From Octopus bimaculoides (Eukaryota): a DNA stretch of 64,000 bases. The translations under genes were made by a program, and so were the position numbers. Shown in pieces: positions 9,061 to 62,352 of this stretch. The stretch spans positions 80,257,139-80,321,138 of the forward strand of contig NC_068981.1 in NCBI RefSeq assembly GCF_001194135.2. Reading direction: 5' to 3'. Position 1 is the stretch's first letter; every line of letters begins with the position of its first letter. The notes under the pieces are model-generated. The model was not told the origin of the DNA. It saw only the letters and a program-made list of their open reading frames with translations, and did no database searches.

Positions 9061-9094
9061 TTATTTTTTGAAGTAATATTACAATTAACAATGA

Positions 9095-9311: not shown

Positions 9312-9356
9312 ACAACTAACAATGACCCTCATATTTATTCTTAATATATAAGCAGC

Positions 9357-12228: not shown

Positions 12229-12418
12229 GTAAGTTTGTAATATTTTTAATCAGTCATTGATTACAAAAAAAAACATTGATTTAAATGCTTACATTACATT
12301 CAAAACAAAAGTCTTTTCTTCTTTTTAAATACTAAAATTTAAAATGTGCACATTCCAAGTTAGTATAGTATATTACCTCTCACTCTCAGTAGAAAGAAAG
12401 AAAGATAGACACACGCAA

Positions 12419-20319: not shown

Positions 20320-20515
20320 GAGCTGGCAGAATTGTTTGCATACCAAACAAAATGCTTAGTGGCACTTCAGCCATCTTTACATTCTGAGTCTAAATTCTAC
20401 CAAGGCCAACTTAGCCTTTCATCCTTTTGGAGTTGATAAAATAAGTACCAGTTGAGTCCTGGGGCTGACGTATTCGACTTACCCTGTTCCCGATACTTGC
20501 TGGCCTTGTACCAAT
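20320..20515 (+). mobile_element. SINE family B copy
   Basis: gagctggcagaattg...cctttcatccttttggagttgataaaataagtaccag...gctggccttgtacc. Confidence 0.8.
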
Positions 20516-20963: not shown

Positions 20964-21125
20964 GATCTCCTTGTATATATTGCCAAAGAAGGTGTCACAA
21001 CAACTGACTTATTTCGGAGGCCAGGTAACCCTTATGATACCCGACGGATTGTCAAGCGCTTAGAAGAAGGAAAACCTGTGATATTTACCAATTATAACTT
21101 TTATACTCTGGCATCTGTTGTCAAG
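20964..21125 (+). CDS. RhoGAP-domain protein, exon B: DLLVYIAKEGVTTTDLFRRPGNPYDTRRIVKRLEEGKPVIFTNYNFYTLASVVK (arginine-finger exon)
   Basis: Acceptor cccttttttaatag| and donor AAG|gtaagg. 162 nt (54 codons), phase 0-0, no stops. LFRRPG matches the GIFRxxG arginine-finger motif (Arg codon CGG at 21015-21017). Confidence 0.93.
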
Positions 21126-23639
21126 GTAAGGATTCTAATTTTTTATTTTTTTCTCTTTTATCATTTCAGTTGAAGGAATTTTTTTTTTTTTCATCTTTTG
21201 AGAAATTGCTTTTATGATTGAAACACCATCCTACTGCTAAATAGGAACTTATGGTCAATTAGCCATGACAAATAAAGTATACAGTTATTTACTTTATTCA
21301 TGAGCATACAAGAGTTACATAAGGTTTGAACTTATGACTATGAAGTCACTGATCCAACAGCTTGAAATCAACAATTGTGCCGCATTTAACTTTATAAGTT
21401 ATTAAAATTTGTTGACAAACAAAAGATAAGTTTCTGTTTGCAATTCAACCTCACCCGTTGTGTCATTATTCTTATTTACTTTTTTTAATCTTCATAAATA
21501 TGTGGCTGTATTAAACTTCAAATATTTTTGAAAGGTCACATCACATTGTTTTTAAAAATTGTTTACGCCATCATTTCGATGTTTTAAAAATTCTTTCTTT
21601 CATATTGTTTCGCTTTGTTGATAGTTTGTTGTATTTTTGTATCGTGTAATTCAAAATATTTGTGAAATGTTCTTCCCTTAATAACTAGGAAGATATTTAA
21701 AATATTTGGTGAAATAATAAGCATTTGTCATTGTATCAGTTTCCTCCTTGCTAGTTTAGAAATTTGCAAGTTTGTTTTTTTATATGTTGATGGTTGCCCT
21801 TTTTACCATTTACTCCTAAATTGTGAAGTTGAAGCAGAATCTGTTTGTCTGTCAAATTTGCTAGAAGCAGTGTTATGTACAAGTTAAATGGTTGCAAGAA
21901 GAATTATGATTGAAAATTTTAAAAAATCAAACTAGTGTTCATTTTCTCACTTGTTCAATATCTTAGCTTATAAAAACTGTGACTCTGCATCCAATAAGAA
22001 ATAATGTGATTGAGTATTTCTACATAAGATTTTCTTACGTACAAATCATCTAAAATCATGATCATCATTCTTGGTTTGATACTTGCAAATGGAATTTGTT
22101 TCTGTGGCCAGATACCCTTTGCATCACCAACCCTCACCTGTTTCCAAGCAAAGTAATATCTCCCCATGGCCAGATATTTTTCATGGAAGACTAGAAGTGA
22201 GGGACTTCTGGATCTCAAGATGAGGAGGCACACACATGCGCATGCACACACACACACACGATTAATTCTTTCAGTTTCCATCTACCATACAACTTTCATT
22301 GGCCCAATGCTATAGTATAAAAACACTTTCCCAAGATGCCATGCAGTGGGAATGGTGCTAACAAAAAATATATATATAATTTATCATCTTGTGTGGTTAA
22401 GAAGTTTATGGCAATTTTCAAGGTAATTTTTTTTTTTTACAAAAAAATTATCTTCCATGCTGCAAAATACAGTAAATATGATATTATAAAATTAATATTG
22501 TGAGAAAAAAACCAACATGATTTAGCAATCTAAATTTATATCCATATTCAGATCTAAACCCCACAGCTTACCAGCCCTGGTCAAACCGTGCAACCCATGC
22601 CAGCATGGACAACAGATGTTAAATGATGATGATTCAATTCATAAAAAAAACATAAATATTCAAAATGACTACCAAATATTTTTCTTTTCTTCTAATCCAT
22701 CATGTATATAGGCCAAACTAAATGCTTCCTATGAATTTAGCAATCTTAATTTAGATTTTTTTTTTTTTCTTTTAGCTCTTGAAATTTATTTCCTTATTGA
22801 ATTTATTTAAAAATATAATGTAAATATTCAACATGACTACTAACTATTTCTGTTTTTTCTACTTCATCAAGTATATAGGTCAAATTAAATATTTCGTATT
22901 AATTTCTGCTTATGATTTATTGTTCTAACAAGGTTCTTTCGCATATATAACAGTTCTGTCTTGAAATAACTTGTGAACCAAAAGATTGAGTGGCTTTCTA
23001 TTATGTACTATTAAGGGACAATAAATTTAAACTCTAGATTAAAATTAGATCTTATATCAGAATGGTTAATTTCATTATTCAAATAGTTTTTTTTTGTTTG
23101 TTTGTTTTGTTTGTTTTTTTTAACACTGCACCAGTTTTTTGAAAAGATTGAAGTACAGATATTTGAATTGACTCTTGGATCTTAAAAGTGTGTTGTCAGT
23201 TTCCATAGAATGTAAAGAAAAGCTGTCTTCAATAGGATATGAAATTAGAACAGTGAAACATTAATCTAGTTATGGTGAAGCATCTAGTTTGGTCAACTCT
23301 GTCTTCTTTCTCTCCATGACCTTTATGTAAAGTTTTTTTTTATAAAAAATCAAAAAAAATCTGTGATTCGCTGCAAGAAACATAGATGCTACAAATTAAT
23401 GTATATTTTTACAAGACCATTTAATTATATCTTTCTAGAAGTGCTACTTAAAAAAAAAAAAAGAACTTCATTGTAGAACTTCATAGATATGTATTAAATT
23501 AATTTGCTTTAGCTATGTTGAAGCAAACAAAGATACTATTTGTATGAGCCACAGGCTCAAGATCGAGGTGGTTTTACTCTTTGCTAATTGAAGTATTTAC
23601 AACTAAAGCTTATTTAACTGGTTCTAATAATAATAGATC

Positions 23640-25988: not shown

Positions 25989-26216
25989 TGACTCATGCTA
26001 GCATGGGAATACAGAGAAACGAACAAAATGAATCAATATATATTTACACAAAATAAGCTTCTAACAGCTACTGTCTACCTGTTTCACTCATGAAACATTA
26101 AATATATCCATGTTATGTGTATATGTTTGTGTATTGTGTTATGTAATAGAATTTCACTTGAATAATTATCTGAAAATGGTTCCCTTAAGAAAGTATTTCT
26201 TTTTTGTTGTTTACAG

Positions 26217-26326
26217 AAATTTTTATTAAAATTACCAGGCGGCATTTTTACACCAAGCGGAGAAGAAAAATTGCTTGAAGTTCTTAACATGTCTGAATAT
26301 TCCGATCAGTGTCAGCATGTTAATCA
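26217..26326 (+). CDS. RhoGAP-domain protein, exon C: KFLLKLPGGIFTPSGEEKLLEVLNMSEYSDQCQHVN(Q)
   Basis: Acceptor tttttgttgtttacag| and donor CA|gtaagt. 110 nt, phase 0 to 2. With exon B it gives ASVVK-KFLLKLP, aligning to the RhoGAP ASLLKLFLRELP motif. Confidence 0.92.
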
Positions 26327-26594
26327 GTAAGTAATTCATTATGCCATTTCAGTATATTCTATGCATATAAAATGTCAGACATTATGTACAGTTTTACACT
26401 AATCAGGTTAAAATATTTGTTTTTGGATTTTACTAATTGAGCATCCTGAAATGATCCATAAGACTGTACACCAGAATACATACATATCTAGGAGCCGTAC
26501 ACTCAACACACTGGAACATGAAAATGTAATGGAATATCTATAGCCTTATCTCTCTACTTTCTTATTTTCTTAAAAATATATGTATGTGTATGTG

Positions 26595-26814: not shown

Positions 26815-27201
26815 NNNNNNNNNNNNNNNNNNNNNNNNNNNNNNNNNNNNNNNNNNNNNNNNNNNNNNNNNNNNNNNNNNNNNNNNNNNNNNNNNNNNNN
26901 NNNNNNNNNNNNNNNNNNNNNNNNNNNNNNNNNNNNNNNNNNNNNNNNNNNNNNNNNNNNNNNNNNNNNNNNNNNNNNNNNNNNNNNNNNNNNNNNNNNN
27001 NNNNNNNNNNNNNNNNNNNNNNNNNNNNNNNNNNNNNNNNNNNNNNNNNNNNNNNNNNNNNNNNNNNNNNNNNNNNNNNNNNNNNNNNNNNNNNNNNNNN
27101 NNNNNNNNNNNNNNNNNNNNNNNNNNNNNNNNNNNNNNNNNNNNNNNNNNNNNNNNNNNNNNNNNNNNNNNNNNNNNNNNNNNNNNNNNNNNNNNNNNNN
27201 N
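26815..27201. other. Assembly gap (387 N) flanked by (TA)n
   Basis: N run. The X-containing ORFs are artefacts. Confidence 0.99.
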
Positions 27202-27244: not shown

Positions 27245-27505
27245 ATGGACTGGCTCTTGTGCGGGTGACACATAAAATACACCATTTTGAGCGTGGCCGT
27301 TGCCAGTATCGCCTGACTGGCCTTCGTGTGGGTGACACGTAAAAGCACCCATTACACTCTCGGAGTGGTTGGCGTTAGGAAGGGCATCCAGCTGTAGAAA
27401 CTCTGCCAAATCAGATTGGAGCCTGGTGTAGCCTTTGGGTTCCACCAGTCCTCAGTCAAATCGTCCAACCCATGCTAGCATGGAAAGCAGACGTTAAACG
27501 ATAAT
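27245..27505 (+). mobile_element. Young (CpG-retaining) copy of retroposon family C, which ends in a (GAT)n-type tail
   Basis: aaaagcacccattacactctcggagtggttggcgttaggaagggcatccagctgtagaaac...acccatgctagcatggaaagcagacgttaaacgat. Confidence 0.8.
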
Positions 27506-29620
27506 GTAAATCTCTGCAAAATATAAAAACATTGATTTGGAACTTATGTTTCACTAAAATATCTCTAAAATTATTTAAAGGGCAAGAATATTAAATGAAA
27601 ATGTAATCAGTTAGAAACAAAACTATAGCATCATCTTTTGATGTAAATGTGTTAAGAATTATTGCTTTCTTAATAAAAAAAAAAAAAAAGCTTGTATTTC
27701 TTGTGTTGTTGCTCTTGACATCAGCAAATCTTTGACCATATCTGACAAGAATTTATAACTAAATTATCCATCTATGGGCTTCAATCATCTCTCATCTTTT
27801 GGATTGGAAATTTCTTAAAAGACCACTAAGTTGCAGAATATACTGATGGGACTCCCTGCATAAATTATAGTGTATCAATAAAGTTGATTTATATCTCCTA
27901 CATCCTTCCTTTCAATTGATTTATCAATACTTCTAATTAGATTGACTCCTATATAGATAATACTATTTTTCCCTTTACATTCTTCTATAAACTTCACATA
28001 GATGTATGTCATCTATATGCATCCTAAACATTTCATACCAGACATACACAACTTTCATAGGAATAGAAGCCACAAATTACTTCTTTATTTCTATAATGGG
28101 GACATGGCCATCTAATTTCCTTTAACAGCACACAGTTACAATTACTAAATGTATAAATGTAAACAGTCTTTTACTACACCTTCTCAACACATGAAGAATT
28201 CATGACTAAAGTGAAGGTGCTGACACTATATATGCAAATATCTAAAATGCATTAAAAAAAATTACAAAAAAACCCCCAGACTATTTGGCTAATTGTCAAA
28301 TATTTGATCACCAACACACTAAAATCACTGGTTCATAAACATGCTGTTTCTTCTCCCCATCTCTTCTATTATACTGTAACAGTCTCTGTTCCTCTCAGTT
28401 AGCTCACTACATGTCACTTAGTCCCAAGCTTGGGTCTAAATGGCATTCCTCATACTCTCTCCCCTCTCAAATCTCTCACTAAACACTTTACTGAATCATT
28501 ACTTCCCAGAACTACAATCTTCTGAAATTCTCATCTACATTTTTCCTACTCATGCTCAAACTGAACATTAACTGTATTGCTCTCTCCAGTTTGGAGAGCT
28601 TGCAGAAGTTATGGATACTGCTACACTTTCTCCTCTAACTAATGAAAAAAATTGCTACATGTTCTGGTATCTGTTGTAGTATCATGGTTTTTTTTTTTTT
28701 TTATTGTTATTATTTTAGTAATTTTACTTTCCTGTTTTTATGGGCTTGAAAAATTAGGGGTTTGTCAGGATTTTGCTAAAGTAATTATAATCTTTCTGAT
28801 ATGAATGTAATATAGATTTTGTGGTTGATGAGAAATAATTTCTAGTTCAATACATGTATTTTTCTAATATTCATAGCTTGAATTCAATCTGGGATTACAT
28901 GGACATCTGGAAACAAGACACCTGGTAACAATTGGAGTGTAGATCAGATTGATCAAAATGTCAATATACACTGTAAATGTGTGGTTAATGGTTCAGAATT
29001 GCATAATCTTATGACTGAAGCTCTTTTGTTGATATTATGATAACTGTGTAATTCAGCAGTAAAACATTAATCCTAAAATATGTAGCCTCATCTATTACTG
29101 GGTTGTTTATCACTGACGCAGGATAACATGACACGCTCAACTGTGACCCATGTTACACTTATCATAAATTGATCTGTGATAACACAGGTTTGTAATCAGC
29201 TGAAGATTTTGCTTATACCACAACAATGCACCCTAGTGACCAGCCACAATGCCCAGTTACCCAGAATGCATGGTCTATCACTTGTATTTACATCACTGTG
29301 CTACAAGGCTGTGTATTCTTTTCATGAATTTACATGCACACACCCATCATAAGACCTATAAAAAGAAAACATGCAAAGGTACTTATCCTAACAAATGATG
29401 CAAATGAGTATATTCTCTACAGGAAAAGGACTGCAAGTTTGATGTCAATGACACTAGCATTATTTCTATTTACTAAGTGGAGAAGATTCATTTTCGACTG
29501 TGACATTTTTTTAAACTAAATTCTGTGATAAACATGTATTTGCTAAATTTACACCTTTATTTTTATTTATTTGCATTGTTTTTTTATGATTATTATTCTC
29601 TATTCTTATTATCTTTAAAG

Positions 29621-29955
29621 GTTTATCCAGTCCCTTAGTGTTAGTCACCGTCAACTTGTTTCTTTACTGTTTGGAATATGGTTTCGTATTGTTAATCATT
29701 CCGATATCAATTCCATGACAGTGGAAACATTGGCTCGGAGTGTTGCTGGAAGCATGTTTTTGACATGCGCTGATGACCCAGACAAAGTGGAACTAGCTAT
29801 TCGGATTATGCAATTGCTCATTGACAATTTCGGAGTAGCCAATATGTTTGGCCATGAAAATATTACCTACTTCACACAAACTACACTCACTGGTATTAAT
29901 GTGCGGGAAAAATTTCGCTATGAATATAATTACCCACCTGAGGAAATCCTGCCTC
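29621..29955 (+). CDS. RhoGAP-domain protein, exon D: FIQSLSVSHRQLVSLLFGIWFRIVNHSDINSMTVETLARSVAGSMFLTCADDPDKVELAIRIMQLLIDNFGVANMFGHENITYFTQTTLTGINVREKFRYEYNYPPEEILP
   Basis: Acceptor ttatctttaaag| and donor CCTC|gtaagt. 335 nt, phase 2 to 1, matching exon C. Same frame as ORF 29715-30125. NSMTVETLA aligns to the RhoGAP NKMxxxNLA motif. Confidence 0.93.
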
Positions 29956-32900
29956 GTAAGTATCGTTGCTGCTTTTTTATTTTATACTTTATTAACTTAT
30001 TAACTCATGCACTAACTCACTTATTCAAGACTCAGTTGTTTTTAAAAGGACATTTAACATTTTGTACATATCTATTGCATAATTTGAGCTTATATTTGAA
30101 GAGAATCAGTAAAATTTCAATGTAGAAAAACTATTGATTTATATTAGAGTATGGATAGTTCTTTGATTTTGATTATGTCTATGTTTTTAAATGTTTTCAC
30201 ATCTTCATATCCTAACAATATTCTGATTTTAATTGAACAATACATGTCTGGTTTATTGTTTAATATGTTAAAGCAAACATAAATAAGTTTTTACTTTACA
30301 TTTTGATCTCAACTTTGTTACTTTATAACCTTAAGTAGTTTTATAGTTAAAAATAATAAAAACTAGTGTGTTATGTAGCATGATAATCTTTTTTCGAAAA
30401 ATTAGCCAAAATATAAATAACAAAGAATGATGAAATGCTACCACTTAATATATTTTAACTTTCTTTTCTATCATTTCTGCTCAAGAATTTTAAAATAATG
30501 ATTATATTTTTATTATATATTTATTATTACTGTTCTTTCTTTATATTTTTATATATACTTTTGCTATTATATCTTTCATTTTGAGTTTGTCAGTTTTCTT
30601 TTATTCGCTTAAACTTTATGAAAAAAACTGAAATTGAAGATTTAATAATACTAAGAACATTATATAGTTTAAATTTAGTTCAAATCAATGCTGAATCTAA
30701 ATCAATACTGAATCAATTTAAAAATGGAAAACAATAAGTGAAGAAAACATGAGAGAAAACAATGTAGTCATGAAATATTCAACATGCCTTTATTATTATA
30801 TTTGAATAGTGAGTGTGTGTGGTTGTATGGTGACTCACACTGTATGTGCTGATAGATATTTTCTTCTGAACTATATAACTTTTTCTTTTCTAAATTACAT
30901 TTGCTCTCATTCCAAAGGGAATTAAAATAATAATAATAAAATCATAAATCATACTGTTTATACATCAATATTTTTTTAAATAATAAATCATTTACAATAG
31001 TAAAAAACAATTTTATTGGTTTAGTTTAAATCACTCAAAAATTCCTGTTTTTTTTTTATTATTATAGAAATTAATATAATTCTGTTTTGTTTCCAGTATT
31101 TGTTTTTATTTTGCACTATTTCTACTATATAATATTTTTCATTTTCAAATCTAGTTTTCAAACTTAGCTTCGTGCATAACAAACCTGATTATGAATCATC
31201 ATGTAAACTCAAGAAATTCCTTATGAAAATTATGTAATGTAAAGTGCCTAAAAATAAGAAAATCTACCTAACTTTTTTAAAGCACAATAAAAATTTTCAA
31301 TATTTTAGTGTGTGAATCAGAAGTAGAATGGTGATATGTTTGAGTGCCAGACAAAAGTCTTGCAATATTCTATATCCCTTAGTTCAAATCTTGCTAGGCT
31401 CAATTTTGATATACGTAGTCAGAAGTAGTCCAGATCTGAAGAAAGATATTCCTTGACAACTTGTAGATTCAGGTCTGGGGTTAATTTCCAGATGATCTAC
31501 TATGAACTAGATGGACTGAGGCAATGTAGAATAGGAGTGAAAGCTTATGTTTGTAAAAGCAAGTAAACCATGATAGGTGGAGCTATGAGCTTCACTGAAG
31601 TACAACATAGATGCCATGTAAATAGTAGTACAGCTTTCCTTAGTGTCAAAGAAATTCAGTTTAAGACACTTCATAAGAAAAATGCAATAACAATAAAATA
31701 TTTCATTTTGTACACAATCCTTTCTCATTTTATAATATTCAACAGTATTTCTCTGAGCCAGTTAATATGGCTGGTTTGTATGTAATAGTATTCCTAATAA
31801 ATCAATATGACCTGCTAGTGCTTAGACATCATTACTGATCAGTGACATTCCTAGTCCAATAATCTGAAATATATTTTGCAACAAGATATTTCAGTTTAAG
31901 TTTGTTTCTTTACCATCTTTACCAAAATAGAATTATTTCCTTTTGTTTTTACTTTTTCCTATTTCAAATATTTACTATTTATATTTACTTTTGAAAATTT
32001 CTGCAGATTTCCCTTTTAACTAATCATTCTAAATCACAAGTGTCCAAAGTTCCAGTGCTCAACTCTGGTTCTCTTAAGTGAATAAAAGATAAACCACATA
32101 AAAATCAGCAAAATCATGGTCAGTACCATTTTCTTAGTGAGATATAAGGTGTAAATTGTAGCAGATAAGATTGGATGATGTTCAAACTGTTTCTCAAGGA
32201 TATCAGTAGTGCATGCAAAAGGAATCGGTTTCAACTCATAATCAAAACCATGTCTCTGTCTGGAGCTCACCTTTTATCTTAAAATACTTCCCACTGTTGT
32301 ACTCTATGTTACTTTGCTTCCTGACAGACACATTTTTACTTAGAGTAAGATAAAATATTATTTGAAATTCATAATTGTTTTTTACATTGGCACAAAGCCA
32401 TATATTCGATCGGGAAGCAGGAGGGAAACAAAACAATTGTGGTAGATTTTTAATTTCAATCACTGATTCATGAAACTAAATAGTTGTAAGTCATTTAGTC
32501 TATTGCTCTCTCAATTCCTGTCACTCCTATTTTTTCCCATTTCATGTTCATAATAAGTAGAGTAGCTTTAGGAAAGTGGAGTTATTTGCCATAATCAGAT
32601 ATTCAAAACGAGGCTTGCAGGAGGATACAAATTCATGGAATGTTCATTAAGAACACGATACTATCATATTGCTCATTACCCTTTTAACAGTTTATATTGT
32701 TTACTTAATTATGTTGTATTTTTCTGTGGTGAAGCAAAGTGCTTATTGGTAGCCTGTCTTACTTTAATAATTTCTAAAAAGAATTAAAATCAAACATATG
32801 CCCTTTTATTTTGCTGATAGTTATTCAAAATATTCACATCTTTTCTTTTATGGTATTACTTTTGCTATTGCTGAACAAGTTTCGTACATTCTCTTGTGAA

Positions 32901-33835
32901 TTGATTTTGTATCTTGTTCTTATTATTTGAAAATAGTTTGAATCCAGCCTGTCTAAAAGATGTTTATAATTTGAAACTGGTTTTATATTTATATTTTATG
33001 ATGTGACTTGTGATATTATTTTATCATTAGACACTAAGGTTCTTTATATCAAGAACAACCTGAACTTTGACTCTTATAGCAGCTGCTGCTAGATTTCAGA
33101 AGAATTATGATCTTTGGAGATTAATTCAGAAATGTTATATCTTGTAGCATTTGAGTTCACCATTCAGTTTTGTGTTATAAACCATCTATTTTGAGGTGAT
33201 CAGTAAATAATGTATAAGTACATTTAATCATCTCATTTCAGATATTTATGGAAGAGTAAAAATTTTAAGAATTTTCTAATTTTTGAGTTAACAGTTACAC
33301 TGATGAAATTACTCATTTTATTCAAACTTTTAATAATTTTCCAACTATGTTCAAACTAAATATAAATAAAATGTGATAAGTTGAAGTGTAAAAAAACAAA
33401 AACTTTTTTATCACGTGTTAACAAAAACTTACGAGATCAGAACCATATGTTGACTTACTGAAACAGTCATGTTTCCTTACAGAAGTTTAAGTAGGGAGTA
33501 ATTCAGTGATTTAAACTTTAGTGTATTATTTTTATTTGAATGTTTAACCTTTTAGCTGCTTACCAAAGAATTTACTGAGTTTTATTTTTGTTTGGTACTA
33601 AAACAATCAAGATACTTCTAATAATTTGTATTTAATTACTCTTTATCTATAAAATCATTTATCAACAAGGGTGTTTATTTGGAGCTATAGAGATCTCATT
33701 CCCGTTTGTGTTCCTTGTAGAGATAGTATTAAAGTATGAAAAGAATGTTAGCTGTTATTACATACACACAGTGTGATAAGCTTTAAGGGATTTATGTAAC
33801 ATTTATTAATTCAAACATTAGCAGTTAAAACAAAT

Positions 33836-33941
33836 TATAAATTATTATACAAGTTGTGATCAGATAAGTAGAATACAGTTACAATAATAAATTATTATAT
33901 AAGTTGTGATCAGATAAGTAGAATACAGTTACAATAATAAA
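33836..33941 (+). repeat. Tandem duplication of a 50-bp unit (1 mismatch)
   Basis: attattata(c/t)aagttgtgatcagataagtagaatacagttacaataataa occurs at 33841 and 33891. Confidence 0.95.
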
Positions 33942-35114
33942 GTTTTATAATAAAATATCTGATACAATAACTATTCTGAAATCTCTAGTATGGGAGGTTT
34001 TTAGAAACTATATTTCTATAAGAGAAAATCCAATCTGTTTATTTTCCAAATCCATATGCAGTCTAAATATTTCAGTTAAAAATGTTGATTCATAGTGTTA
34101 TTCTGAAATTATAATTGTAAGAAAATAGCCTACAGTTGTATGCTGGTTGTTGGTTCCCTTCCCCCTAATTCTATTATATTTAATATAAAAGGCTAAAATA
34201 ACTGAAATTCATAGAATTTTCATGGATCTAGTTCGTTATTTTAAGGAAATATCATCACTGTGTAGAGTAGCTTTAATTCATTCTGCTAAAAAACAATAGC
34301 AAACAAATTTTAGCAATACCTTTTCAGTGAGTGAAGATGTTTTGAATTGTAAACTTGATTCAGTCATTATTATAATCAAGTTGTTGAAATATTAACCCTT
34401 TCAGATTTTCAAGCTAGTACTTGCTTTAGTTTAAACCCAGGACATAGTGGTTTGATGAAGCGACAAGGGTTTAAAGAGTGATTCATTTTAGATGGAGCAT
34501 CTAGCTATTAAAATTCCAACTTCTACAATACATGCAAATCTCACATATTTGCACTTGGTACTAGTCCTTTCTAGAATTAAAAGAAAATGTTGAAAACAAT
34601 AATAAAAAAAAAGAAAATGATCATGTATTACTATATGAGATGCATTAAAGAAAAGAAGCTAAATAAAAGAAAAAAGATTTTTTTCAAATGTTGAGCTTCT
34701 GTATTTTGTATAATTTCATATTGATGAATGCTTCCATTTGACAAAACCTGTCTAAATATTTAATGAAATTTTGTAATGTTAATGGAAGATATATGTGAAA
34801 GATATACTGAGCAGATTATTGTTTGTAAAGAAATACAAAACAGTAGCACTTACGTATATGTATTTATATCTACGGATGAGTCACTATTATTAGTTCTATC
34901 AGCAGAGCTAAGAATACCATAGTGTTCATTACCTTATACATTAGCATCACTAGAATTTTTTAAATGGATTTCATGTAGACATAATACTTAAAGTAAGAGG
35001 TAGTTGTGTTAAGTTTATACTTAAGTCTCTGCAGTTCTCTTGGGTGATTTTCTCAGTATTATTCATGATCAGATGTTAATAAAGGAAATTTTTGGACTGT
35101 ACCAATGAAGAAAC

Positions 35115-35150
<36 letters not shown>

Positions 35151-36042
35151 CCCATTGTAATCTATAGTTTGAGAATTTCCATATCTTTGTAATGTGTTCA
35201 CTAACTTCAAAAACGAATTCCTACTTATCTAAATGATCATCTGGAAAAAATAAAATACAACCTAATTAATTCATTTCTCTGGTTATGTTGCATAATGAAT
35301 GCAAATAGTTGGAAACATTTATTGGTTAGTTATCTTGGGAAAAGCTTGATCATCAGTTCAATATCAGATTTTAGCAGCCACATCATTACTCATTGCAATT
35401 CTGTGTGGCTTTTCCATGACTAAATAATTAACAGAGAAAGAGATTAAAAAAAAAATCATGTTTCAGAGGTACCGCCTTTCACTTATATATTGATTTCTAT
35501 CAGATCTTAACCTTATTTGATATTTATTGAAAAACGTTTCTTGTATCATTGGTATTTGTGGAATCTGTTCTTCTGATGAATGTCATAAAAGTTAAATCAT
35601 TGTTATCAATGGACAATGACTCAGTAATACAGTATGGTACTTTTATTCTTATTGTTGAGAGATGGTTGCTCTTCCATAATTCTGTTGTCAAATGTTGAGT
35701 TATTTGGACAAGCCACATAATTTTATATTTGTGAAGGGAGTGAAATGTGAAGTTGTAGATTTTCCATAAGCATAAGTAGCATAGGGGAACTGAAATAACT
35801 TCAGTTAGGACTTTATGGCATATTGCATATTCACCAAGTGGTATAAAAATGTAACTATTCCCGTTAAAGCTCTTATATCTTCAGCATGTTTGTAATCCAG
35901 TTTGATTCCTTGTTCAAACTGTTTTGTGTAATTTATTAATTTCCTTGCAAAATCATTATTATAGATTACTATTTCTCTTTTATGTGAGCATGAAAGTTTA
36001 AGAATTTGGATTGCTAGACCAATTCTTTTATCATCATCATCA

Positions 36043-36230
36043 TCCTTTAACATCCATTTTCTATGCTGGCATGTATTGGACAGTTTGGCCAGAGAGCTGC
36101 ACCAGGTTCCAGTCTGATTTGGCTTGGTTTTTATGGCTGTTTGCCCTTCCTAACACCAATCACTTTACAGTGTATACTGGGTGTTCTTAATGTAGCACTG
36201 GCATAAGTGCTTTTATGTGGTGCTGCCACA
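36043..36230 (-). mobile_element. Family C retroposon 3' fragment
   Basis: catcatcatcatcctttaacatcc...gcccttcctaacaccaatcac. Confidence 0.75.
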
Positions 36231-37017
36231 GGACTCTTGCAAGCCAATCCTCTTCCCTGGGGAATGCGGCCTTAACACTTCTGCTGTGGAAAATGGGTCT
36301 TCTTGAGCACCAAGTATCTCAGTCCTTTGTCATTTTCTCTAAAAGGTTTGGCGTCCTGAGGTCTTTATCCCATATATTCCTACTTCATGTACTTCTGTAC
36401 TTCATCCCATATATTCCTAGGTCTTCTTCTTCCCAAACAACACCTTATAGTATACCCTCTTTTAAGTAATATTGACTCCTAAATTTAGAAATGGTTGGTT
36501 TTGTTTAAAAATTGTTTATTATTTGTCAGTATCTTCTTGTCTCTGATATTAATAAATGTATTATACAGTTTTTTTTTTATTGTACTCTAAACAAATATTC
36601 ATTTGAAAACTATAAAAATGATACATTTCATGCTTTTGTTGGTTTTGACAAATGTTTAGATTTTTTTCTATACTTTATTGGGTGAATATAAAATTCAGTT
36701 GCTATTTATTTCTGAACTTTTTCTCGGTTTAACCATTCTTTCTCTTTCACATTTTTTAAACATCAAATATTTTGTCTACTTATTTGTGTAGCTATTAATT
36801 ATTTATGTCTGTTCTTTATATTTCCAACCATTTTTCCCCACCAGATATATACACAAGTCTTGAATCCATTATTGGTTATTAAAAAAAAATGAAAAATTAA
36901 TAATCAACTGTGGTGATAAGGTTGTATTTATTGCAGTTAAATAGAGGATGATTAATGGTGCCCACAGCTCTGTTTTAAGATCCTTTGGCATAGGATTATA
37001 TTATATATATATATATC

Positions 37018-37325
37018 ATGATCATCATCGTTTAACGTCTGCTTTCCATGGACAATTTGACTGAAGACTGGCAAGCCAGAAGGCTGCACCAGGCTCCAAT
37101 CTGATCTGGCAGAGTTTATACAGCTGAATGCCCTTCCTAACGCCAACCACTCTGATCATCATCATCGTCATCATCCTTTAACATCTGTTTTCCATGCTGG
37201 CATCGGTTGAACAGTTTGACCAGAGCTGGAGAGCTGCACCAGGTTCCAATCTGATTTGGCTTGGTTTCTATAGCTATATGCCCTTCCTTACACCAACCTC
37301 TTTCATGTGGCACTGGCACACGGCT
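37018..37325 (-). mobile_element. Two tandem family C 3' fragments (37018-37150 and 37153-37325)
   Basis: Each begins with a (CAT)n tail and carries gcccttcct(a/t)ac(g/a)ccaacc. Confidence 0.75.
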
Positions 37326-38000
37326 CTTGCAGACCAATGTTCTTCACCAGGGGAAGTGGCCATATATAAATATATGAATGAGGTTAATATAGTTGTAGTC
37401 ACCTTGTAATCACGTTGCTTGTTAGGGATTAGAGTGTATACTTGAGGAGGGAAAAGGGAATTGCAGAGTTTCAGGTCTGGTAAAGAAGGACTCAGAAACC
37501 TGCTTAATCAAGGTGTTGCGACTGTGCTGATGACATGTAAGGTTGGAGTGATGGAAAGTGCAGTTTAAATTGGAGTAATATAGAGCTAGCCTTTTCAGTG
37601 TTATTAAAGTTTTTGTCAGTGTTGTTTGAGCTTATATGTGCATTTGCATATATGTGTGAAAAAAATGTGTGTAATTTAGTTTAGATACAACAATTTCTAT
37701 ATTTCGCTCGATCCAAGGTGATGATGAAGTGTCACTGAAAATGTTATGGCATTAATAGATTCCACAATTGACCATTTGTTGGAAATATGGTGTTTTGATT
37801 CGATTAAGCTTAGTTTTCTCAGGTTTTATTGCTCAAAGTGGCAAAATTATAACTTTTATATATTGAAGAAAGTCTTAATCTATATATAAGCATATCAATT
37901 TGAGTTTATTTCATTGAATTTTTTTAATTTGGTAATATCAGTCAATATATACACTTAGTTTTATAGAATATCAAAATTAACAGAAATCTTTAGTAAACAT

Positions 38001-38329
38001 TAAAGATTATTTGCCAACATAACGTGGCAGTCATGGTTAGGATGAATGCTACTGCTATTTAGCTCCAGAAAACATCGTCTCCAGCTGACTATACAAAACA
38101 CTATCTGTGTCCTTATATTTTCGAAAAAGGGAGTTTAGTATACCCGCTCAGCATAAAATAATATGTGTGTATCGTGATTTCGGGGTTATTTCTCTTCATC
38201 AGCACAGAATAACTGTTCAGCTGGAGGTGGCATTGCCAAAGTCTTGTTCGAATAGTGCTTCCTGGGGCTAAATAGTAGTAGCATTTGTCCTAACTAGGAC
38301 TGCCACGTTATGTTGGCAAATAATCTTTA
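38001..38329. mobile_element. MITE with about 68-bp terminal inverted repeats, TA at both ends
   Basis: taaagattatttgccaacataacgtggcagtc...ttagctccag at the left end; near-exact reverse complement ctggggctaaa...gactgccacgttatgttggcaaataatcttta at the right end. Confidence 0.85.
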
Positions 38330-38456
38330 CTCTACAGTACTGTTACTGAATGCCTTTCGTTGAGAGATTTACAAATAGTGATTTAGTAAATATTTTTCTT
38401 ATGTAAATGTGTGTACCTTGGTGAGTGTGTGTTTGTAGGAAATGCCAAGGACTCTA

Positions 38457-38838
38457 TAATTCTCTTGACTTTATGCACTTATAACACCACTTATTCTGCA
38501 TCTAAGCTGATGATGCCAAATATACTACTTAATTCTTCTGTGAATCACTGGATGACCAACAGGCTGGTCTAGAAATGCAGGATCTTTTTTTTCATTGGAA
38601 TTGGTGAAAGTAGATAATAGCATCATTTGGTTCATTTCTTATAGCAAGGGTGACAAGAAATGAACCAAATGATGCTATTATCTACTTTCACCAATTCCAA
38701 TGAAAAAAAAGATCCTGCATTTCTAGACCAGCCTGTTGGTCATCCAGTGATTCACAGAAGAATTAAGTAGTATATTTGGCATCATCAGCTTAGATGCAGA
38801 ATAAGTGGTGTTATAAGTGCATAAAGTCAAGAGAATTA
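38457..38838. repeat. Perfect inverted repeat: 184-bp arms (38457-38640 and 38655-38838) with a 14-nt spacer
   Basis: Checked base by base: no mismatches or indels, including the T8/A8 run. Confidence 0.97.
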
Positions 38839-39959
38839 CAGAATAAATATCACTAGAGTCTTGGTTCAAAAAGCACAAATTTTAAATTTTTGTGAGGGTG
38901 TTTTTTAAATGTCACTACATATATGTATATGCATGGACACATATACAGTGAATTTCTCCGTAGTTTTCTGTCCATCAAATTCCACTCAAAAAGTATTGGC
39001 CAGCTTGAGGCTATGATAAAAGACTTGTCCATTCAGTAGGATCGAACCTAGAAGTAAATTATTGTGAAGCATAATTCTTAATCACATAGCTATCCCTGTG
39101 GCATAACAAGTTCCATAAGAACCTCTCTATGTCGTGGTGGTGATGTTGAATACATTGTTTACCTAGATTAGTGAAGTGAGTACATGTGCCTTTTATGTCT
39201 CATTTATAGTTTATGTTTTTGTTTAATTTAACTTATTCAATTATTTATATTGATTTGATTTCTTTTTTTTTTTATTTTAACATTTGGTTAATTCTATTAA
39301 ATTTTCTAAATAAATATAAATGTAAAAATACTTTGAAATAATTCCATTTTAATTTGTTTGTTGCATTGTTTTGTTTCATTGTTTTCTCTTCAATTGATAG
39401 AATGTTCATAAAATAAAATAGTTAGATAGAATGTTCATAAAATAAAATATCAGCCATATGAACAACAAAAACATCTTTCTCTAATTGTTAATATTAATTT
39501 TAATTTTTGATATTATCAGTTACTGAGTGACTTCTATTGTAGAAAGGAATTAACGTACTTATTTGTAAAATATTCATCCTTCATAATTAAAATTACTTGG
39601 AATGGAGAATTCTCACAGAGCAATTAACACTAGTCTTTGTTGTTGTTGTTGTTGTTACTCTTGTAGTTATGTTAACAAAGATAGAATGCAAGTTTAATTT
39701 TTGTTGGGTTAATTAACATAAATACGACTAATAGTTGTAAAATAATAACAAAGGACTATTAACAAACAATGCACATTTTGCTTAAACAAATTGGCAATGT
39801 ATCCTTTAATTACATGTTATATAAATATAATTACCATGACAGATTAATTAATTTGATAACAGATTTAGAAAATCTGTAATTAACACTGCCACCTCTCCCA
39901 TGATTACCAGCGCATGCTCTCTCTGTAGTGCATGTATGTTTTGTCCCTTGCATGTGTAG

Positions 39960-40037
39960 GTGCCGATGCCCTGCCCTGGTTTAATTTTATCCTGCAAGAG
40001 GAAGCCAAAATACATGGGTTCGATCTCCAGCAACATG
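39960..40037 (+). CDS. RhoGAP-domain protein, exon E (78-nt frame-preserving exon): (R)ADALPWFNFILQEEAKIHGFDLQQH
   Basis: Acceptor ttttgtcccttgcatgtgtag| and donor CATG|gtaaga. Phase 1-1 fits exon D (C|GT = Arg). Open, protein-like frame in unique, locally GC-richer sequence. Confidence 0.7.
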
Positions 40038-44280: not shown

Positions 44281-45765
44281 TTATTATTATTATTATTATC
44301 ATTATTATTGCTTTTGCACAGCTTCTAATGCTGGAGATGTTCTACAGCGTCAGCTGTTCACTACCAGTGAACTAAGGTAACACCTCTTATTTTTCAAGCA
44401 CCTTCCAGAGTATTCAAGCGGTTCCAAGCAGTGCTGTTTTCTACAAGTGCTCCACCCTTATTGCAGCCCCTATTTGTTCCACTTACTTCTCGAGATTTTT
44501 GCTCACTGTTCCCAGGGCTCCGACTATTATTGGTACTACTTCTACTTGTTTCATCGACCACAACTGGTTAACTTCTCAAGCTAACCTGTCATATCTCTCA
44601 ACTTTTCTTTCTTCCTTATCGCATACCTTGTTGTCAGCTGGACATGCTATGTCTATGATCCAGCATAGTTTGTTTGCTTTCTCAATTAAGACTATGTCCG
44701 GCTTCCTATCCTCAATCTCATGGTCACACTGAATCATAAAATCCCATAGGATTTTTGCATTTCTATTTCCAACAATGCCTTCAGGTTTATGGTCATACTA
44801 ATTTTTTACTCTGTCAAGTTCATACTTGTTGCAAAGTGTCCAATGGACAAGCCTGGCTATATCGTCGTGGCGTCTCTTATATTCCTTCTGGGCTAGTGGT
44901 GTACATTGGCTGGTAATATGCCATACGGTTTCACCATTTTGTCCACAGATTCTGCACTTATCACATTCTGATGTGTTGTCTATTCTGTATTTTATGTAGT
45001 TTGGTTTTAGTGCTTTAGTGCTTGCTCTTGGGCAGTACAGATTAGAGCCGCCATTTCCAGTTTTAAATCACTTTTAGTCATCCACAGCCATCTTTTTTCT
45101 CTGTCTGTCTTATCTAAAACATCCCTATGAAACTGACCATACATTCTTTCTTTACCCACCTATTTTCAGTTTCATTCGTTTTCAATTTCTTGTATAGTGC
45201 TTTATCTTTGCAATCTTTCATCCTACACAAGCCTGACCTTCTTACGTCTAGTAATAGTGGTTCTGTGGCATTTTTTACATACCATGCTATGTTGTTTTCT
45301 TCTGCTCTAATGCTGTGTTCGCATCCAATAAGTCCTCTTCCCCCTCTTTTTCTTGGAACATACAGTCTGTCTGTGTCACTTTTTGGGTGGAGTGACCCAT
45401 ATCTAGTTAGCAACTTCTTTGTTTTTCTGTCTAAGCTTTTTCGTTCGTCTACTGTCCATGCGATTACCCCTGCTCCACATCTAAGGAGTGAAACCACCCA
45501 GGTTTTGATAGCTTCGATCTTATTCCATCCATTTAATTTCAACTTAAGGATCAGTTTCAGTCTGTGCAAGTACTCCAACTTAAATTTTTCTGTCATTTCT
45601 TTCTCCATCAATTTATCCATTTCCAAAATCCCTAAGCACTTATAGCTCGTTTCTTCTATCTGCTTCATAACCTCCCCCGACAGTATCGTTAGTCCTTCCA
45701 TACATTTGATTTTGCCTCTCTTCAATACTAACACACCGCACTTTCCTTTTATTATTATTATTATT
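44281..45765 (-). mobile_element. 5'-truncated R4/Dong-clade non-LTR retrotransposon (RT C-terminus, CCHC zinc knuckle, restriction-like endonuclease), with stops and frameshifts
   Basis: ORF 45114-45842 carries YKCLGILE...LDRKTKKLL...LHPKSDTDRLYVPRKRGGRGL. Downstream on the minus strand are CRICGQNGETVWHITSQC (CCHC) and RKPDIVLIEKANKLCWIIDIACP (PD-(D/E)xK). (TAA)n tracts lie at both ends. Confidence 0.88.
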
Positions 45766-45774
45766 CTTATAAAA

Positions 45775-45980
45775 GGCGGCGAGCATAGCACATCAGACAA
45801 AAATGCTTTGTGATATTTCTTCCAACTTTGCTTTCTGATCAAATTCTAGCAAAATCCCCTTTACCTTTCACCCTTTCGGAGTTGATGAAATAAGTATCTG
45901 TTGAGTACTGTGGCTGATGTAATCAACTCTTCCCCTCCTCCCAAATGTCAAGACATGTGCCTGTAGCAGAAATGGAATTA

Positions 45981-46125: not shown

Positions 46126-46787
46126 TATGAGGTGGTATCAAAAGGTTCCCAGATTAGTTATGTTTAATAAAAGATAACTCATTTACCTAAGTTTTAACAT
46201 CATCTCCTTTGAAATAGTCACCTCGTGCAGCAATATACAGGCTCCAGCATTCCTGCCACTTTTGGAATCTGGCCTGGAAGCCATTTTCCATAAGTGAGTT
46301 GAGGATCTTCTGCGATTCACTCTGGATCTTGACAACAGTGTTAAAGCAGCAACCTTTGAACTGCATTTTCATCTCGGGGAAGAGGTAGAAGTCCACCAGT
46401 GCTAAATCTGGTGAAAAGGGCAGGTACAGAAGCAATACCATGTTGTTTTTGGCAAGACACTCACAAGTAAGGAGAGCTTGGTGACAGGATGCATCATCGT
46501 CATGAAGAATCCAATTCTTCATGCTCCACAGATTTGGTCACTTTTCCTAAATGTCATCCCTCAAATGCTTCAAAATGTTGCAGTAGAACTCTTGATTGAT
46601 GGTCTGGCCCTGGGGGATGATTTCTTGATGCACAATACCATATTTCTGGGGGTGTCACTCGTGGCAGGTTTTCCAGATAGCTCATTGTCTTCCAGGGACA
46701 TTCTTCCTCTTTTGAAGTGCCCATGACACTTGAAACATGTTGGCACACTACAGAACTAGTCTCGGAACTTTTTAACACCACCTCATA
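46126..46787 (-). mobile_element. Internally deleted mariner (Tc1/mariner DD34D-type) element with both TIRs and TA target duplications
   Basis: Left end TA-tgaggtggtatcaaaaggttcccagattagt; right end actagtctcggaactttttaacaccacctca-TA. Transposase remnants GIVHQEIIPQGQTINQEFYC, WILHDDDASCH and PFSPDLALVDFYLFPEMK...GDYFKGD. Confidence 0.92.
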
Positions 46788-61445: not shown

Positions 61446-62352
61446 TACTATGTGGTATCAAAAGGTTCCCAGACTAGTTATGTTTAATAAAAAAATAACT
61501 TATTTACCTAAGTTTTAACATCATCTCCTTTGAAATAGTTACCTTGAGTAGCAATACACCAGTTCCAGTGTTCCTGCCACTTTGGGAATTCAGCCTGGAA
61601 GTCATTTTCCATAAGTGAGTCAAGAGCCTTCTGCGATTTGCTCCGGATCTCAACAATGGTGTTAAAACAGTGGCCTTTGAACTGCATTTCCATCTGGGGG
61701 GTGGGGGTGGAAGTCTGCAGGTGCTAAATCTGGCAAATAGGGCAGGTGTGGAAGCAGTTTGATGTTGTTTTTGGTGAGAAACTCAAGAGTGATAGAGAAC
61801 CTGGTGACAGGGTACATTGTCATTGTGAGGAATCCAATTCTTCATGCTCCACAGATCCGGTCACTTTCCCCAAATGTCCTCTCTCAAATGCTTCAAAACA
61901 TTGCAGTAGAACTCTTGATTGACGGTCTGGTCTTGAGGGATGAATTCATGATACACAATATCACATTTCCAGGGATGACACTCATGGCAGGTCTTCCAGG
62001 ATGTTCTTCCACTTTGGAAGCACCTGTGCCACTTGAGACATTGAATATGACCCATTGCCTTGTCACTGTAAGCTTGCTGAAACATGCTCAATATCTCTGT
62101 AGCAGACTTCCCAAATTTAACACAAAATTTTGCATTGGTTCTTTGTTCCTGTTCATGACAAAATCACAGACTACAGCATACACATGATCACAAAAACACA
62201 AATTTCACAACTTGCAAAATAAACACTGCAATTGTCACTCATCACACTGTCTTATGAAGGTCACTGCTAGCTCTCATTGTGCACACAACTGTGTGCTGCC
62301 ATCTGTTGATATGCTACAGAACTAGTTCAAGAACTTTTTGATACCACTGTAG
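61446..62352 (-). mobile_element. Internally deleted mariner element of the same family, with both TIRs
   Basis: TIR gtggtatcaaaaggttcccagactagt at 61452 and its inverted copy at about 62321-62350. Transposase remnants KFCVKFGKSATEILSMFQQAYSD, IVYHEFIPQDQTVNQEFYC and FKGHCFNT...QGNYFKGD. Confidence 0.9.

What the first reader, a model, noticed from the sequence alone, without database searches (positions are those of the whole stretch)
38445..38864. Perfect 184-bp inverted repeat with a 14-nt loop inside RhoGAP intron 4
Seen: arms 38457-38640 and 38655-38838 are exact reverse complements, whereas the longer repeats in this window are visibly diverged. The arms match no other repeat here. A short imperfect outer pair (ccaaggactcta 38445-38456 / tagagtcttgg 38854-38864) continues the palindrome beyond a 15-nt insert. 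Inference: either a very recent fold-back duplication, or an older palindrome homogenised by template switching or gene conversion. If transcribed, it would form about 184 bp of perfect dsRNA 1.1 kb upstream of exon E. Coleoid cephalopods are known for extensive ADAR A-to-I editing, so it could be a hyper-editing substrate, an endo-siRNA source or a cruciform-prone site.
Basis: partly seen in the sequence, partly recalled or inferred. Interest (0 to 1): 0.75.

Follow-up and report, generated by a model that had tools for sequence, protein, structure and literature searches.

The report
Perfect 184-bp palindrome in an intron
A stretch of intron DNA in a RhoGAP gene is followed 14 bases later by its exact mirror-image copy; it is real in the assembly and evolutionarily young, most likely a copying accident, and no function is shown.

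Summary
Window 38457-38640 and 38655-38838 are perfect reverse complements (184 nt) around a 14-nt loop. A 12/11-nt outer pair lies beyond a 15-nt unpaired insert. The arm has no other copy in the 64-kb window, where all other repeats of at least 100 nt are 66-88% identical. The palindrome lies in a roughly 10-kb intron of a plus-strand RhoGAP-domain gene, 1.1 kb upstream of a small conserved exon.

My best reading (about 50%) is a young local inverted duplication made by replication template switching or snap-back repair synthesis. Zero differences in 184 nt bounds arm divergence at 1.6% or less. The rivals are a young hairpin-type MITE, an older palindrome that was re-homogenised, and an assembly artefact.

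The physical consequences are predictable: a very stable pre-mRNA hairpin and a DNA quasi-palindrome of the kind shown to be fragile in yeast. ADAR editing, siRNA production and any selected function are untested. The octopus origin is also unverified. Genome-wide copy number could not be measured, because a positive control showed the protein database does not detect this genome's non-coding repeats.

This is an ordinary kind of feature in an unusually clean state. Interest is low to moderate.

The parts
38445..38456 (.). Outer left half-site CCAAGGACTCTA
   Evidence: Reverse complement of 38854-38864 apart from one extra base. Chance probability is about 1.4e-3.
38457..38640 (.). Left arm, 184 nt, 34% G+C, no CpG, contains a T8 run
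   Evidence: Exact reverse complement of 38655-38838.
38641..38654 (.). Asymmetric 14-nt loop/spacer ATAGCAAGGGTGAC
   Evidence: It stays unpaired in the DNA fold.
38655..38838 (.). Right arm, 184 nt
   Evidence: Exact reverse complement of the left arm.
38839..38853 (.). 15-nt unpaired segment CAGAATAAATATCAC between the right arm and the outer right half-site
   Evidence: No template longer than 9 nt exists within about 1 kb on either side. It forms a bulge in both folds.
38854..38864 (.). Outer right half-site TAGAGTCTTGG
29607..29990 (+). Context: upstream coding block holding the end of the RhoGAP domain. The limits are alignment limits; splice sites were not mapped.
   Evidence: tblastn to L001/L002/L003 gives 65-82% amino-acid identity. 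It matches Pfam RhoGAP profile positions 99-144.
39960..40037 (+). Context: next conserved exon (peptide ADALPWFNFILQEEAKIHGFDLQQH) with AG acceptor and GT donor, 1,121 nt downstream of the right arm
   Evidence: Sequence. Weak collinear matches in L002 14388-14492 and L003 11227-11334.

Best explanation
This is a genuine, evolutionarily young quasi-palindrome created in place by a local inverted (fold-back) duplication.

Proposed origin (inferred): during replication or break repair, the growing DNA strand reached the end of what is now the loop. It then switched template onto the complementary or nascent strand and copied about 184-196 nt backwards. It then returned to the original template. 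The 15-nt unpaired segment and the 1-nt deletion at the outer right end are the untidy return junction, or two later indels.

The element sits passively in a roughly 10-kb intron of a plus-strand RhoGAP gene.

Consequences that follow from the sequence:
- Any pre-mRNA or lariat that includes it can fold into about 184 bp of uninterrupted duplex, which is shown by calculation.
- The DNA is a closely spaced perfect inverted repeat, the type that forms hairpins or cruciforms and is break-prone. That behaviour is shown in yeast, not here.

Inferred only: it is transcribed with the host gene; the duplex would be edited promiscuously by ADAR and/or diced. I see no evidence that it is maintained by selection.
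For: - The arms are identical at 184/184 with a short asymmetric loop.
- There is no other copy of the arm or of its flanks in the window.
- The symmetry continues for 11-12 nt beyond the perfect part (p about 1.4e-3). A duplicated tract that ran a little further would produce this; a transposon boundary would not.
- No direct target-site duplication flanks 38445/38864 (sequence).
- Zero substitutions together with two indels, both confined to the outermost 27 nt of one arm, fits junction complexity better than gradual decay. This is inference.
- Template switching is documented to create perfect hairpin stems in a single event (PMC8794818; PMC5453318).
- The upper 95% bound on arm divergence is 1.6%, against 12-34% for every other repeat in the window.
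- A fold-back assembly error would run back into the reverse complement of the left flank. Here the right flank is different, unique sequence, and the nearest gap is more than 11 kb away.
Against: - No outgroup or second individual was available, so the ancestral state is unknown.
- Documented short template-switch events are tens of bases long; the largest pattern in PMC8794818 was 59 bp. A copied tract of 184-196 nt is therefore long for that class.
- The 15-nt segment has no identifiable nearby template.
- Genome-wide copy number could not be measured. The negative database searches carry little or no weight: a known multi-copy repeat of this window is equally invisible to the protein search, the DNA collections searched are unlikely to contain this genome, and the one hit was spurious.
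- The window holds two older hairpin-type elements (9337-9557 and 38001-38329), which shows that mobile hairpin elements exist in this genome.
Confidence: 0.5

Rival explanations
1. It is a young copy of a non-autonomous hairpin-type transposon (a MITE or foldback element) whose arms run almost the whole length of the element. It was inserted recently into the intron, possibly at a TA dinucleotide.
For: - Two older elements of the same build lie in the window. One is 9337-9557, with about 100-nt arms at 82-88% identity and a 13-nt loop. The other is 38001-38329, with 74-nt terminal inverted repeats at 89% identity, only 116 bp upstream.
- If the element is taken as 38459-38836, it is flanked by TA on both sides. 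That is the Tc1/mariner and Stowaway target duplication.
- An ORF at 46187-46522 looks like a mariner-type transposase C-terminus. This is from memory only; Pfam gave no hit.
- The outer pair plus the 15 nt could then be a pre-existing small stem-loop that was hit by the insertion. The joined flanks fold at -6.8 kcal/mol, z = -2.8.
Against: - There is no second copy in 64 kb. This is weak evidence: a family would need on the order of 10^5 copies for one to be expected here.
- TA is its own reverse complement, so the 'TA duplication' cannot be told apart from the inverted repeat.
- With ends at 38445/38864 there is no target-site duplication.
- MITE arms are rarely 100% complementary over 184 nt unless the family itself arose very recently from a fold-back event.
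- The termini show no similarity to the mariner-like remnants in the window.
Confidence: 0.2
2. It is an older, partly decayed palindrome whose inner 184 nt were recently made perfect again. The mechanism would be intra-palindrome template switching (quasi-palindrome correction) or arm-to-arm gene conversion. The outer 12 nt and the 15-nt indel were left untouched.
For: - There is a sharp boundary between a perfect inner part and an imperfect outer part.
- Template switching is documented to repair imperfect stems to perfect ones (PMC8794818; PMC8604942).
Against: - The outer remnant is only 12 nt long and carries no substitutions, so nothing shows real age.
- Beyond it the flanks share no symmetry.
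- A conversion tract that covers the whole arm up to the loop amounts to re-making the palindrome, so this reading differs from the best explanation only in timing.
Confidence: 0.12
3. It is an assembly or library artefact: a fold-back chimera or a gap-closing error in a scaffolded draft. The real genome carries a single arm.
For: - The window comes from an assembly with sized N gaps of 21 and 387 nt, meaning it was scaffolded and gap-closed.
- Perfect identity is also what an artefact would give.
- No independent assembly of this locus could be retrieved.
Against: - The centre (arm end, 14-nt asymmetric loop, arm start) and two different unique flanks all need read support.
- A simple fold-back would continue into the reverse complement of the left flank, and this one does not.
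- Palindromes from missed long-read adapters are kilobases long and carry adapter sequence at the centre (general knowledge).
- There is no gap within 11 kb.
- An older natural structure of the same design exists at 9337-9557.
Confidence: 0.08
4. Whatever its origin, it is a functional RNA element. It could be a hairpin-RNA (endo-siRNA) locus. It could instead be an ADAR-binding or hyper-editing structure that influences processing of the RhoGAP transcript. Its perfection would then be maintained by selection.
For: - It is a very stable 184-bp perfect duplex if transcribed.
- It lies on the transcribed strand's intron, 1.1 kb from an exon.
- Nearby inverted repeats are the usual ADAR hyper-editing substrate across metazoans, and that study included Octopus bimaculoides data (PMC9989829).
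- Young hairpin-RNA loci with near-perfect arms exist in Drosophila (PMC10317233).
Against: - There are no expression, editing or small-RNA data.
- The arm has no similarity to any exon or other sequence in the window, and no protein-level match exists, so no target is identifiable.
- No Rfam family reaches its threshold. The sub-threshold hits go to a dozen unrelated miRNA hairpin models on both strands, which is a generic hairpin signal.
- The orthologous introns of two distant relatives hold no long hairpin.
- Perfection is fully explained by youth.
Confidence: 0.07

Closest known systems
Closely spaced perfect inverted repeats ('quasi-palindromes'), such as the 320-bp Alu-QP12 construct studied in yeast
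   Same: Identical arms of a few hundred bp are separated by a 12-14-nt asymmetric spacer. In yeast such repeats raise gross chromosomal rearrangements more than 10,000-fold through hairpin-capped breaks (PMC8053094).
   Different: The arms here are shorter (184 against 320 bp). This is a natural locus in an animal intron. No fragility was measured, and spacers above 8 nt already lower breakage in that system.
Hairpins created or repaired by template-switch mutations (Löytynoja & Goldman 2017; Mönttinen & Löytynoja 2022)
   Same: A single event yields a perfect reverse-complement stem with a short loop and possibly untidy junctions. The same process can also re-perfect an imperfect stem.
   Different: Reported events are typically tens of bases long; the largest pattern in the rRNA study was 59 bp. 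This one is 184-196 nt, and no ancestral sequence is available to map the four switch points.
Palindromic AT-rich repeats (PATRRs) of human chromosomes 11, 17 and 22
   Same: They are near-perfect palindromes of several hundred bp, some of them intronic. They are polymorphic, cruciform-forming and translocation-prone. This comparison rests on my own knowledge and was not checked with a tool.
   Different: PATRRs are very AT-rich with essentially no spacer. This arm has the G+C content of its surroundings (34% against 32%) and a 14-nt spacer.
Drosophila hairpin-RNA (hpRNA) endo-siRNA loci
   Same: They are long, sometimes near-perfect inverted repeats. They are often evolutionarily young and may sit inside other transcripts (PMC10317233).
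   Different: hpRNAs are defined by Dicer-2-dependent ~21-nt siRNAs, and their arms are usually homologous to a target gene. No small-RNA data exist here and no target homology was found.
Palindromic MITEs (for example mariner-derived or Stowaway-like elements)
   Same: The size is a few hundred bp, the arms run nearly the full length, and a TA target is possible. Older elements of this build are present in the same window.
   Different: Multi-copy status and unambiguous target-site duplications define a MITE. Neither could be shown here.
Intronic inverted Alu pairs as ADAR substrates
   Same: Two inverted copies in one intron form an intramolecular dsRNA in the pre-mRNA, which is the standard hyper-editing substrate (PMC9989829).
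   Different: Alu pairs are independent insertions. In my recollection they are roughly 10-20% diverged and usually hundreds of bases apart. This pair is a perfect duplex with a 14-nt loop.

Membership tests
Quasi-palindrome / closely spaced perfect inverted repeat (a structural class) | Two reverse-complementary arms of high identity | tested here: met
   184/184 complementary.
Quasi-palindrome / closely spaced perfect inverted repeat (a structural class) | Short non-repeated spacer (about 20 nt or less) | tested here: met
   14-nt asymmetric spacer at 38641-38654.
Quasi-palindrome / closely spaced perfect inverted repeat (a structural class) | Hairpin or cruciform formation and breakage in vivo | not testable with these tools
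   Only the predicted single-strand DNA fold is available: -227.9 kcal/mol, z = -41.
Template-switch-born hairpin | Ancestral sequence lacks the reverse-complement copy, and the derived sequence is explained by four switch points | not testable with these tools
   No orthologous intron from a close relative is available. The nearest coding match is 88% amino-acid identity on a 1-kb contig. The orthologous introns in L002 and L003 show no nucleotide similarity to the palindrome.
Template-switch-born hairpin | Perfect stem with clustered changes confined to the junctions | tested here: met
   There are zero differences in 184 nt. The only irregularities (a 15-nt segment and a 1-nt deletion) lie at the outer end of one arm.
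MITE / foldback transposon | Multiple dispersed copies in the genome | tested here: inconclusive
   No second copy in the 64-kb window. Database searches were negative, but a positive control with a known multi-copy repeat of the window was also negative.
MITE / foldback transposon | Target-site duplication flanking the terminal inverted repeats | tested here: inconclusive
   No duplication at 38445/38864. A TA/TA pair at 38457-58 / 38837-38 is possible but cannot be told apart from the palindrome itself.
hpRNA / endo-siRNA locus | Long inverted repeat able to form an intramolecular duplex | tested here: met
   RNA fold of -355.8 kcal/mol, z = -38.
hpRNA / endo-siRNA locus | [quoted passage not shown] | not testable with these tools
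   No small-RNA data. The criterion is taken from PMC10317233.
hpRNA / endo-siRNA locus | Arms homologous to a target gene or transposon | tested here: inconclusive
   None found in the window or at protein level. The rest of the genome could not be searched.
microRNA precursor (Rfam families) | Score at or above a family's gathering threshold | tested here: not met
   Zero hits at gathering thresholds. The best sub-threshold hit is plant MIR2630 at 110 bits against a threshold of 144. About 12 unrelated hairpin models also hit on both strands.
ADAR hyper-editing substrate | Clustered A-to-G mismatches in RNA relative to DNA | not testable with these tools
   No RNA data. Only the structural prerequisite (long intramolecular dsRNA) is met (PMC9989829).

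The most novel reading that the evidence does not exclude
The palindrome is a newly born functional hairpin-RNA locus nested in a RhoGAP intron of a cephalopod. Its 184-bp perfect duplex would be diced into endo-siRNAs against an unidentified target elsewhere in the genome. It could instead act as a high-affinity ADAR sink that modulates editing or splicing of the host transcript. Its perfection would be kept up by recurrent template switching or by selection.
Probability: 0.05. Interest if true: 0.6.

Novelty: new member of a known kind. Interest (0 to 1): 0.3.

Why it matters
If real and young, the locus is a snapshot of how long perfect hairpins are born in a single mutational step. That step is the raw material for hairpin-RNA and miRNA genes and for ADAR substrates.

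It would also be a natural, well-defined test site in an animal known for heavy RNA editing, if the octopus attribution holds. It could show what the cell does with a perfect intronic dsRNA and whether such a DNA structure is tolerated or polymorphic. The arm length of 184-196 nt would extend the size range usually discussed for short template-switch events.

Without reads, RNA data or a second genome, it remains one clean example of a known class and is not a new phenomenon.

Tried and rejected
**Independent assemblies of the locus.** Exact-product look-ups for the two ORFs overlapping the palindrome and its right flank found nothing on record. The conserved exon's best database match is 88% identical, so the window's own species seems absent from the protein and contig collection.

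**Copy number and repeat-family membership through translated arm ORFs.**
- The 5.8-billion-protein search found no hit at E<=10.
- The exhaustive representative search gave one hit, a 1283-aa tandem-repeat protein. It matches mostly the flank-encoded residues at 34% identity and is spurious.
- A positive control with an ORF from a repeat family that has several copies in the window also found nothing.
- I therefore discard these negatives as evidence on copy number.

**Exact 29-mer from the arm.** There were no matches in metagenome contigs or viral contigs. These collections are unlikely to contain this genome.

**Template for the 15-nt insert.** The longest match nearby is 9 nt, which is chance level in AT-rich DNA.

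**Empty-site or flank paralogues in the window.** None were found.

**Conservation of a long hairpin in the orthologous intron.** Two distant relatives (L002, L003) have only 21-35-nt inverted repeats there. At about 65% amino-acid identity they are too distant to be informative.

**Rfam membership.** No family reaches its threshold, and the sub-threshold miRNA hits are a generic hairpin signal.

**Identifying the organism from run or assembly accessions in the literature.** No paper mentions them.

**Arm derived from the host gene's exons, hpRNA-style.** No similarity was found.

Full report
**1. Observation**

- Window 38457-38640 is the exact reverse complement of 38655-38838 (184 of 184).
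- The two arms are separated by the asymmetric 14-nt loop ATAGCAAGGGTGAC.
- The repeat finder reports the same pair as 188 nt at 99%.
- Outside the arms, CCAAGGACTCTA (38445-38456) pairs with TAGAGTCTTGG (38854-38864), apart from one missing base.
- That outer right half-site lies beyond a 15-nt unpaired stretch, CAGAATAAATATCAC (38839-38853).
- In 400,000 trials on window sequence, an outer pair this good within 45 nt of either end arose 562 times (p about 1.4e-3). It therefore belongs to the structure.

The predicted folds are extreme:

| Molecule | Energy (kcal/mol) | z-score |
|---|---|---|
| RNA | -355.8 | -38 |
| Single-stranded DNA | -227.9 | -41 |

**2. How unusual it is locally**

- Blastn of one arm against the whole window (word size 7, E<=10) returns only the two arms plus chance matches of 31 nt or less.
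- The flanks are also unique in the window.
- A window self-comparison gives 66 repeat pairs of at least 100 nt. Their identity runs from 66.5% to 88.5% (median 74%), and the palindrome is the only outlier.
- The arm has the composition of its surroundings: 34% G+C against 32% for the window.
- The arm contains no CpG, in a window whose CpG observed/expected ratio is 0.18.
- 'Perfect' should not be over-read. Zero differences in 184 nt gives a 95% upper bound of 1.6% on arm divergence. The structure is much younger than the other repeats, or was recently homogenised. It need not be only a few generations old.

**3. Genomic context**

Plus-strand coding blocks are conserved with three contigs from other organisms (L001-L003).

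| Window block | Pfam RhoGAP profile positions |
|---|---|
| about 12157-12237 | no Pfam match |
| 20964-21128 | 8-61 |
| 26199-26327 | 57-97 |
| 29619-29760, within conserved block 29607-29990 | 99-144 |

- The three matching blocks hit the RhoGAP profile in order, so one RhoGAP domain is split over three exons.
- The next conserved piece is a 78-nt exon with an AG acceptor and a GT donor at 39960-40037. Its peptide is ADALPWFNFILQEEAKIHGFDLQQH. It matches collinear positions in L002 and L003 weakly.
- The palindrome therefore lies in a roughly 10-kb intron, 1,121 nt upstream of that exon, on the transcribed strand's pre-mRNA.
- The same intron is only about 1 kb in L003 and about 4 kb in L002.
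- The label 'intron 4' and the octopus origin could not be checked. No tool output names the organism, the best coding match is 88% identical, and the accessions appear in no paper in the library.

**4. Is it a known RNA or a coding fragment?**

- No Rfam family reaches its gathering score anywhere in the window.
- With relaxed thresholds the hairpin hits about a dozen unrelated miRNA-precursor models, mostly from plants, on both strands. All are far below threshold. This is the generic signature of any long hairpin.
- The longest open frames across the arms are 35-38 codons within an arm (about 50-60 when read into the flanks). They match no Pfam family and nothing in the protein collections.

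**5. Copy number could not be determined**

- I tried to detect other copies through translated arm frames in the 5.8-billion-protein collection.
- I searched the 1.8-billion representative library (the one hit is a spurious tandem-repeat protein).
- I searched an exact 29-mer in metagenome and viral contigs.
- All were negative.
- A positive control was also negative. It used an ORF from a repeat family with several copies inside this very window, searched in the 5.8-billion-protein collection.
- At least that collection therefore cannot see this genome's non-coding repeats. I give the negative results no weight.

**6. Origin: reading the anatomy**

Three features constrain the origin:
- There is no substitution in 184 nt, or in 195 nt if the outer pair is counted.
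- The only irregularities are two indels, both within the outermost 27 nt of the right side.
- Symmetry stops completely beyond 38445 and 38864, and there is no direct repeat flanking those ends.

The simplest account is a single local fold-back event.
- The nascent strand copied through the left arm and the loop.
- It switched to the complementary or nascent strand and copied back for about 184-196 nt.
- It then returned to the original template, leaving an untidy junction.

Supporting literature: template switching is documented to create perfect stems in one step and to re-perfect decayed ones (PMC8794818; PMC5453318 and PMC8604942).

Counter-arguments:
- Described short events are tens of bases long, with a maximum of 59 bp in the rRNA study.
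- The 15-nt segment has no identifiable template nearby.
- No ancestral state is available.

The 'older palindrome, homogenised' variant differs only in timing, and nothing in the 12-nt outer remnant shows real age.

**7. The MITE rival**

The window contains two older hairpin-type elements:
- 9337-9557 has inner arms at 82% identity around a 13-nt loop and outer arms at 88%.
- 38001-38329 has 74-nt terminal inverted repeats at 89% identity around a 181-nt core, 116 bp upstream of the finding.

Neither is similar in sequence to the finding.

If the element is read as 38459-38836, it is flanked by TA on both sides. The joined flanks (CCAAGGACTCTA-CAGAATAAATATCAC-TAGAGTCTTGG) would then form a small pre-existing stem-loop of -6.8 kcal/mol, z = -2.8.

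Two points weaken this rival:
- TA is self-complementary, so that 'duplication' cannot be distinguished from the palindrome.
- 100% arm identity over 184 nt is unusual for a MITE.

Only genome-wide copy number can settle this.

**8. The artefact rival**

In favour:
- The assembly is scaffolded, with N runs of 21 and 387 nt.
- A perfect palindrome is also what an artefact would give.

Against:
- The asymmetric loop needs reads that join it to the arm on both sides.
- The right flank is unique sequence and is not the reverse complement of the left flank.
- No gap lies within 11 kb.
- An older natural structure of the same design exists in the window.

I put this rival below 10%. It is untested.

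**9. What it does**

Shown by calculation: an RNA containing the region folds into about 184 bp of uninterrupted duplex, extended by the outer pair.

Established elsewhere:
- Nearby inverted repeats in one transcript are the conventional ADAR hyper-editing substrate across metazoans, and that survey included Octopus bimaculoides data (PMC9989829).
- Near-perfect inverted repeats can be young endo-siRNA (hpRNA) loci in Drosophila. These are defined by Dicer-2-dependent ~21-nt RNAs, and their arms are usually homologous to target genes (PMC10317233).
- Identical 320-bp inverted repeats with a 12-bp spacer raise chromosomal rearrangements more than 10,000-fold in yeast through hairpin-capped breaks. 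Breakage declines once the spacer exceeds 8 nt (PMC8053094).

Inferred only: this locus is transcribed, edited, diced or fragile. No target homology was found, and nothing indicates selection.

**10. Verdict**

- The feature is a new, very clean member of a known class, the closely spaced perfect inverted repeat or quasi-palindrome.
- It is most likely a young template-switch inverted duplication (about 0.5).
- The rivals are a young hairpin MITE (about 0.2), re-homogenisation of an older palindrome (about 0.12) and an assembly artefact (about 0.08).
- A selected RNA function is possible but unsupported (about 0.05-0.07).
- Interest is 0.3.

Noticed in passing
window 9337-9557: An older hairpin-type element of about 220 bp. 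Its inner arms (9410-9442 / 9456-9488) are 82% complementary around a 13-nt loop, and its outer arms (9357-9399 / 9496-9538) are 88% complementary. It has the same architecture as the finding but no sequence similarity to it.
   Followed up: partly
window 38001-38329: A MITE-like element with 74-nt terminal inverted repeats (89% complementary) around a 181-nt core, only 116 bp upstream of the palindrome. No clear target-site duplication was seen.
   Followed up: partly
window 8894-9261: Two SINE-like copies lie head-to-head with no spacer. The arms are 184 nt and 72% complementary. Short direct repeats (GAAGTAATATT, AATATTACAA.TAACAATGA) around them look like target-site duplications. Related copies lie at 15685-15814 and 20321-20450.
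   Followed up: partly
window 39396-39449: A perfect tandem duplication of a 25-nt unit (GATAGAATGTTCATAAAATAAAATA, period 29), 550 bp downstream of the palindrome. It is a second very young local duplication in the same intron.
   Followed up: no
window 46187-46522 (- strand); related copy at 61452-61999: A 111-aa ORF whose sequence (..HDDDA..PFSPDLA..DFYLFP..) looks, from memory, like the C-terminus of a mariner/Tc1 DDE transposase. Pfam gave no hit at E<=0.1. An 82% identical 548-nt copy lies 15 kb downstream.
   Followed up: partly
window 45114-45842 (- strand): The longest ORF in the window (242 aa). It has no significant Pfam family, only a sub-threshold Baculo_FP hit at E = 0.05. It may be a transposon remnant.
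   Followed up: partly
window 8232-8252 and 26815-27201: Assembly gaps of 21 and 387 N. Both are bordered by (TA)n / (TATG)n-type simple repeats, which themselves score as short palindromes.
   Followed up: no
window 29990-39960 compared with L002 10276-14388 and L003 10246-11227: The intron hosting the palindrome is about 10 kb here but only about 4 kb and about 1 kb in the two distant relatives. The other introns in the RhoGAP-domain region are similarly expanded in the window.
   Followed up: partly
whole window: Strong CpG depletion (observed/expected 0.18, against 1.07 for GpC) at 32% G+C.
   Followed up: no
window 36030-36166, 37161-37303, 27360-27506, 810-956: A multi-copy SINE-like family (78-84% identity between copies) fills the 2 kb upstream of the palindrome. 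An ORF from it, used as a positive control, found nothing in the 5.8-billion-protein collection.
   Followed up: yes
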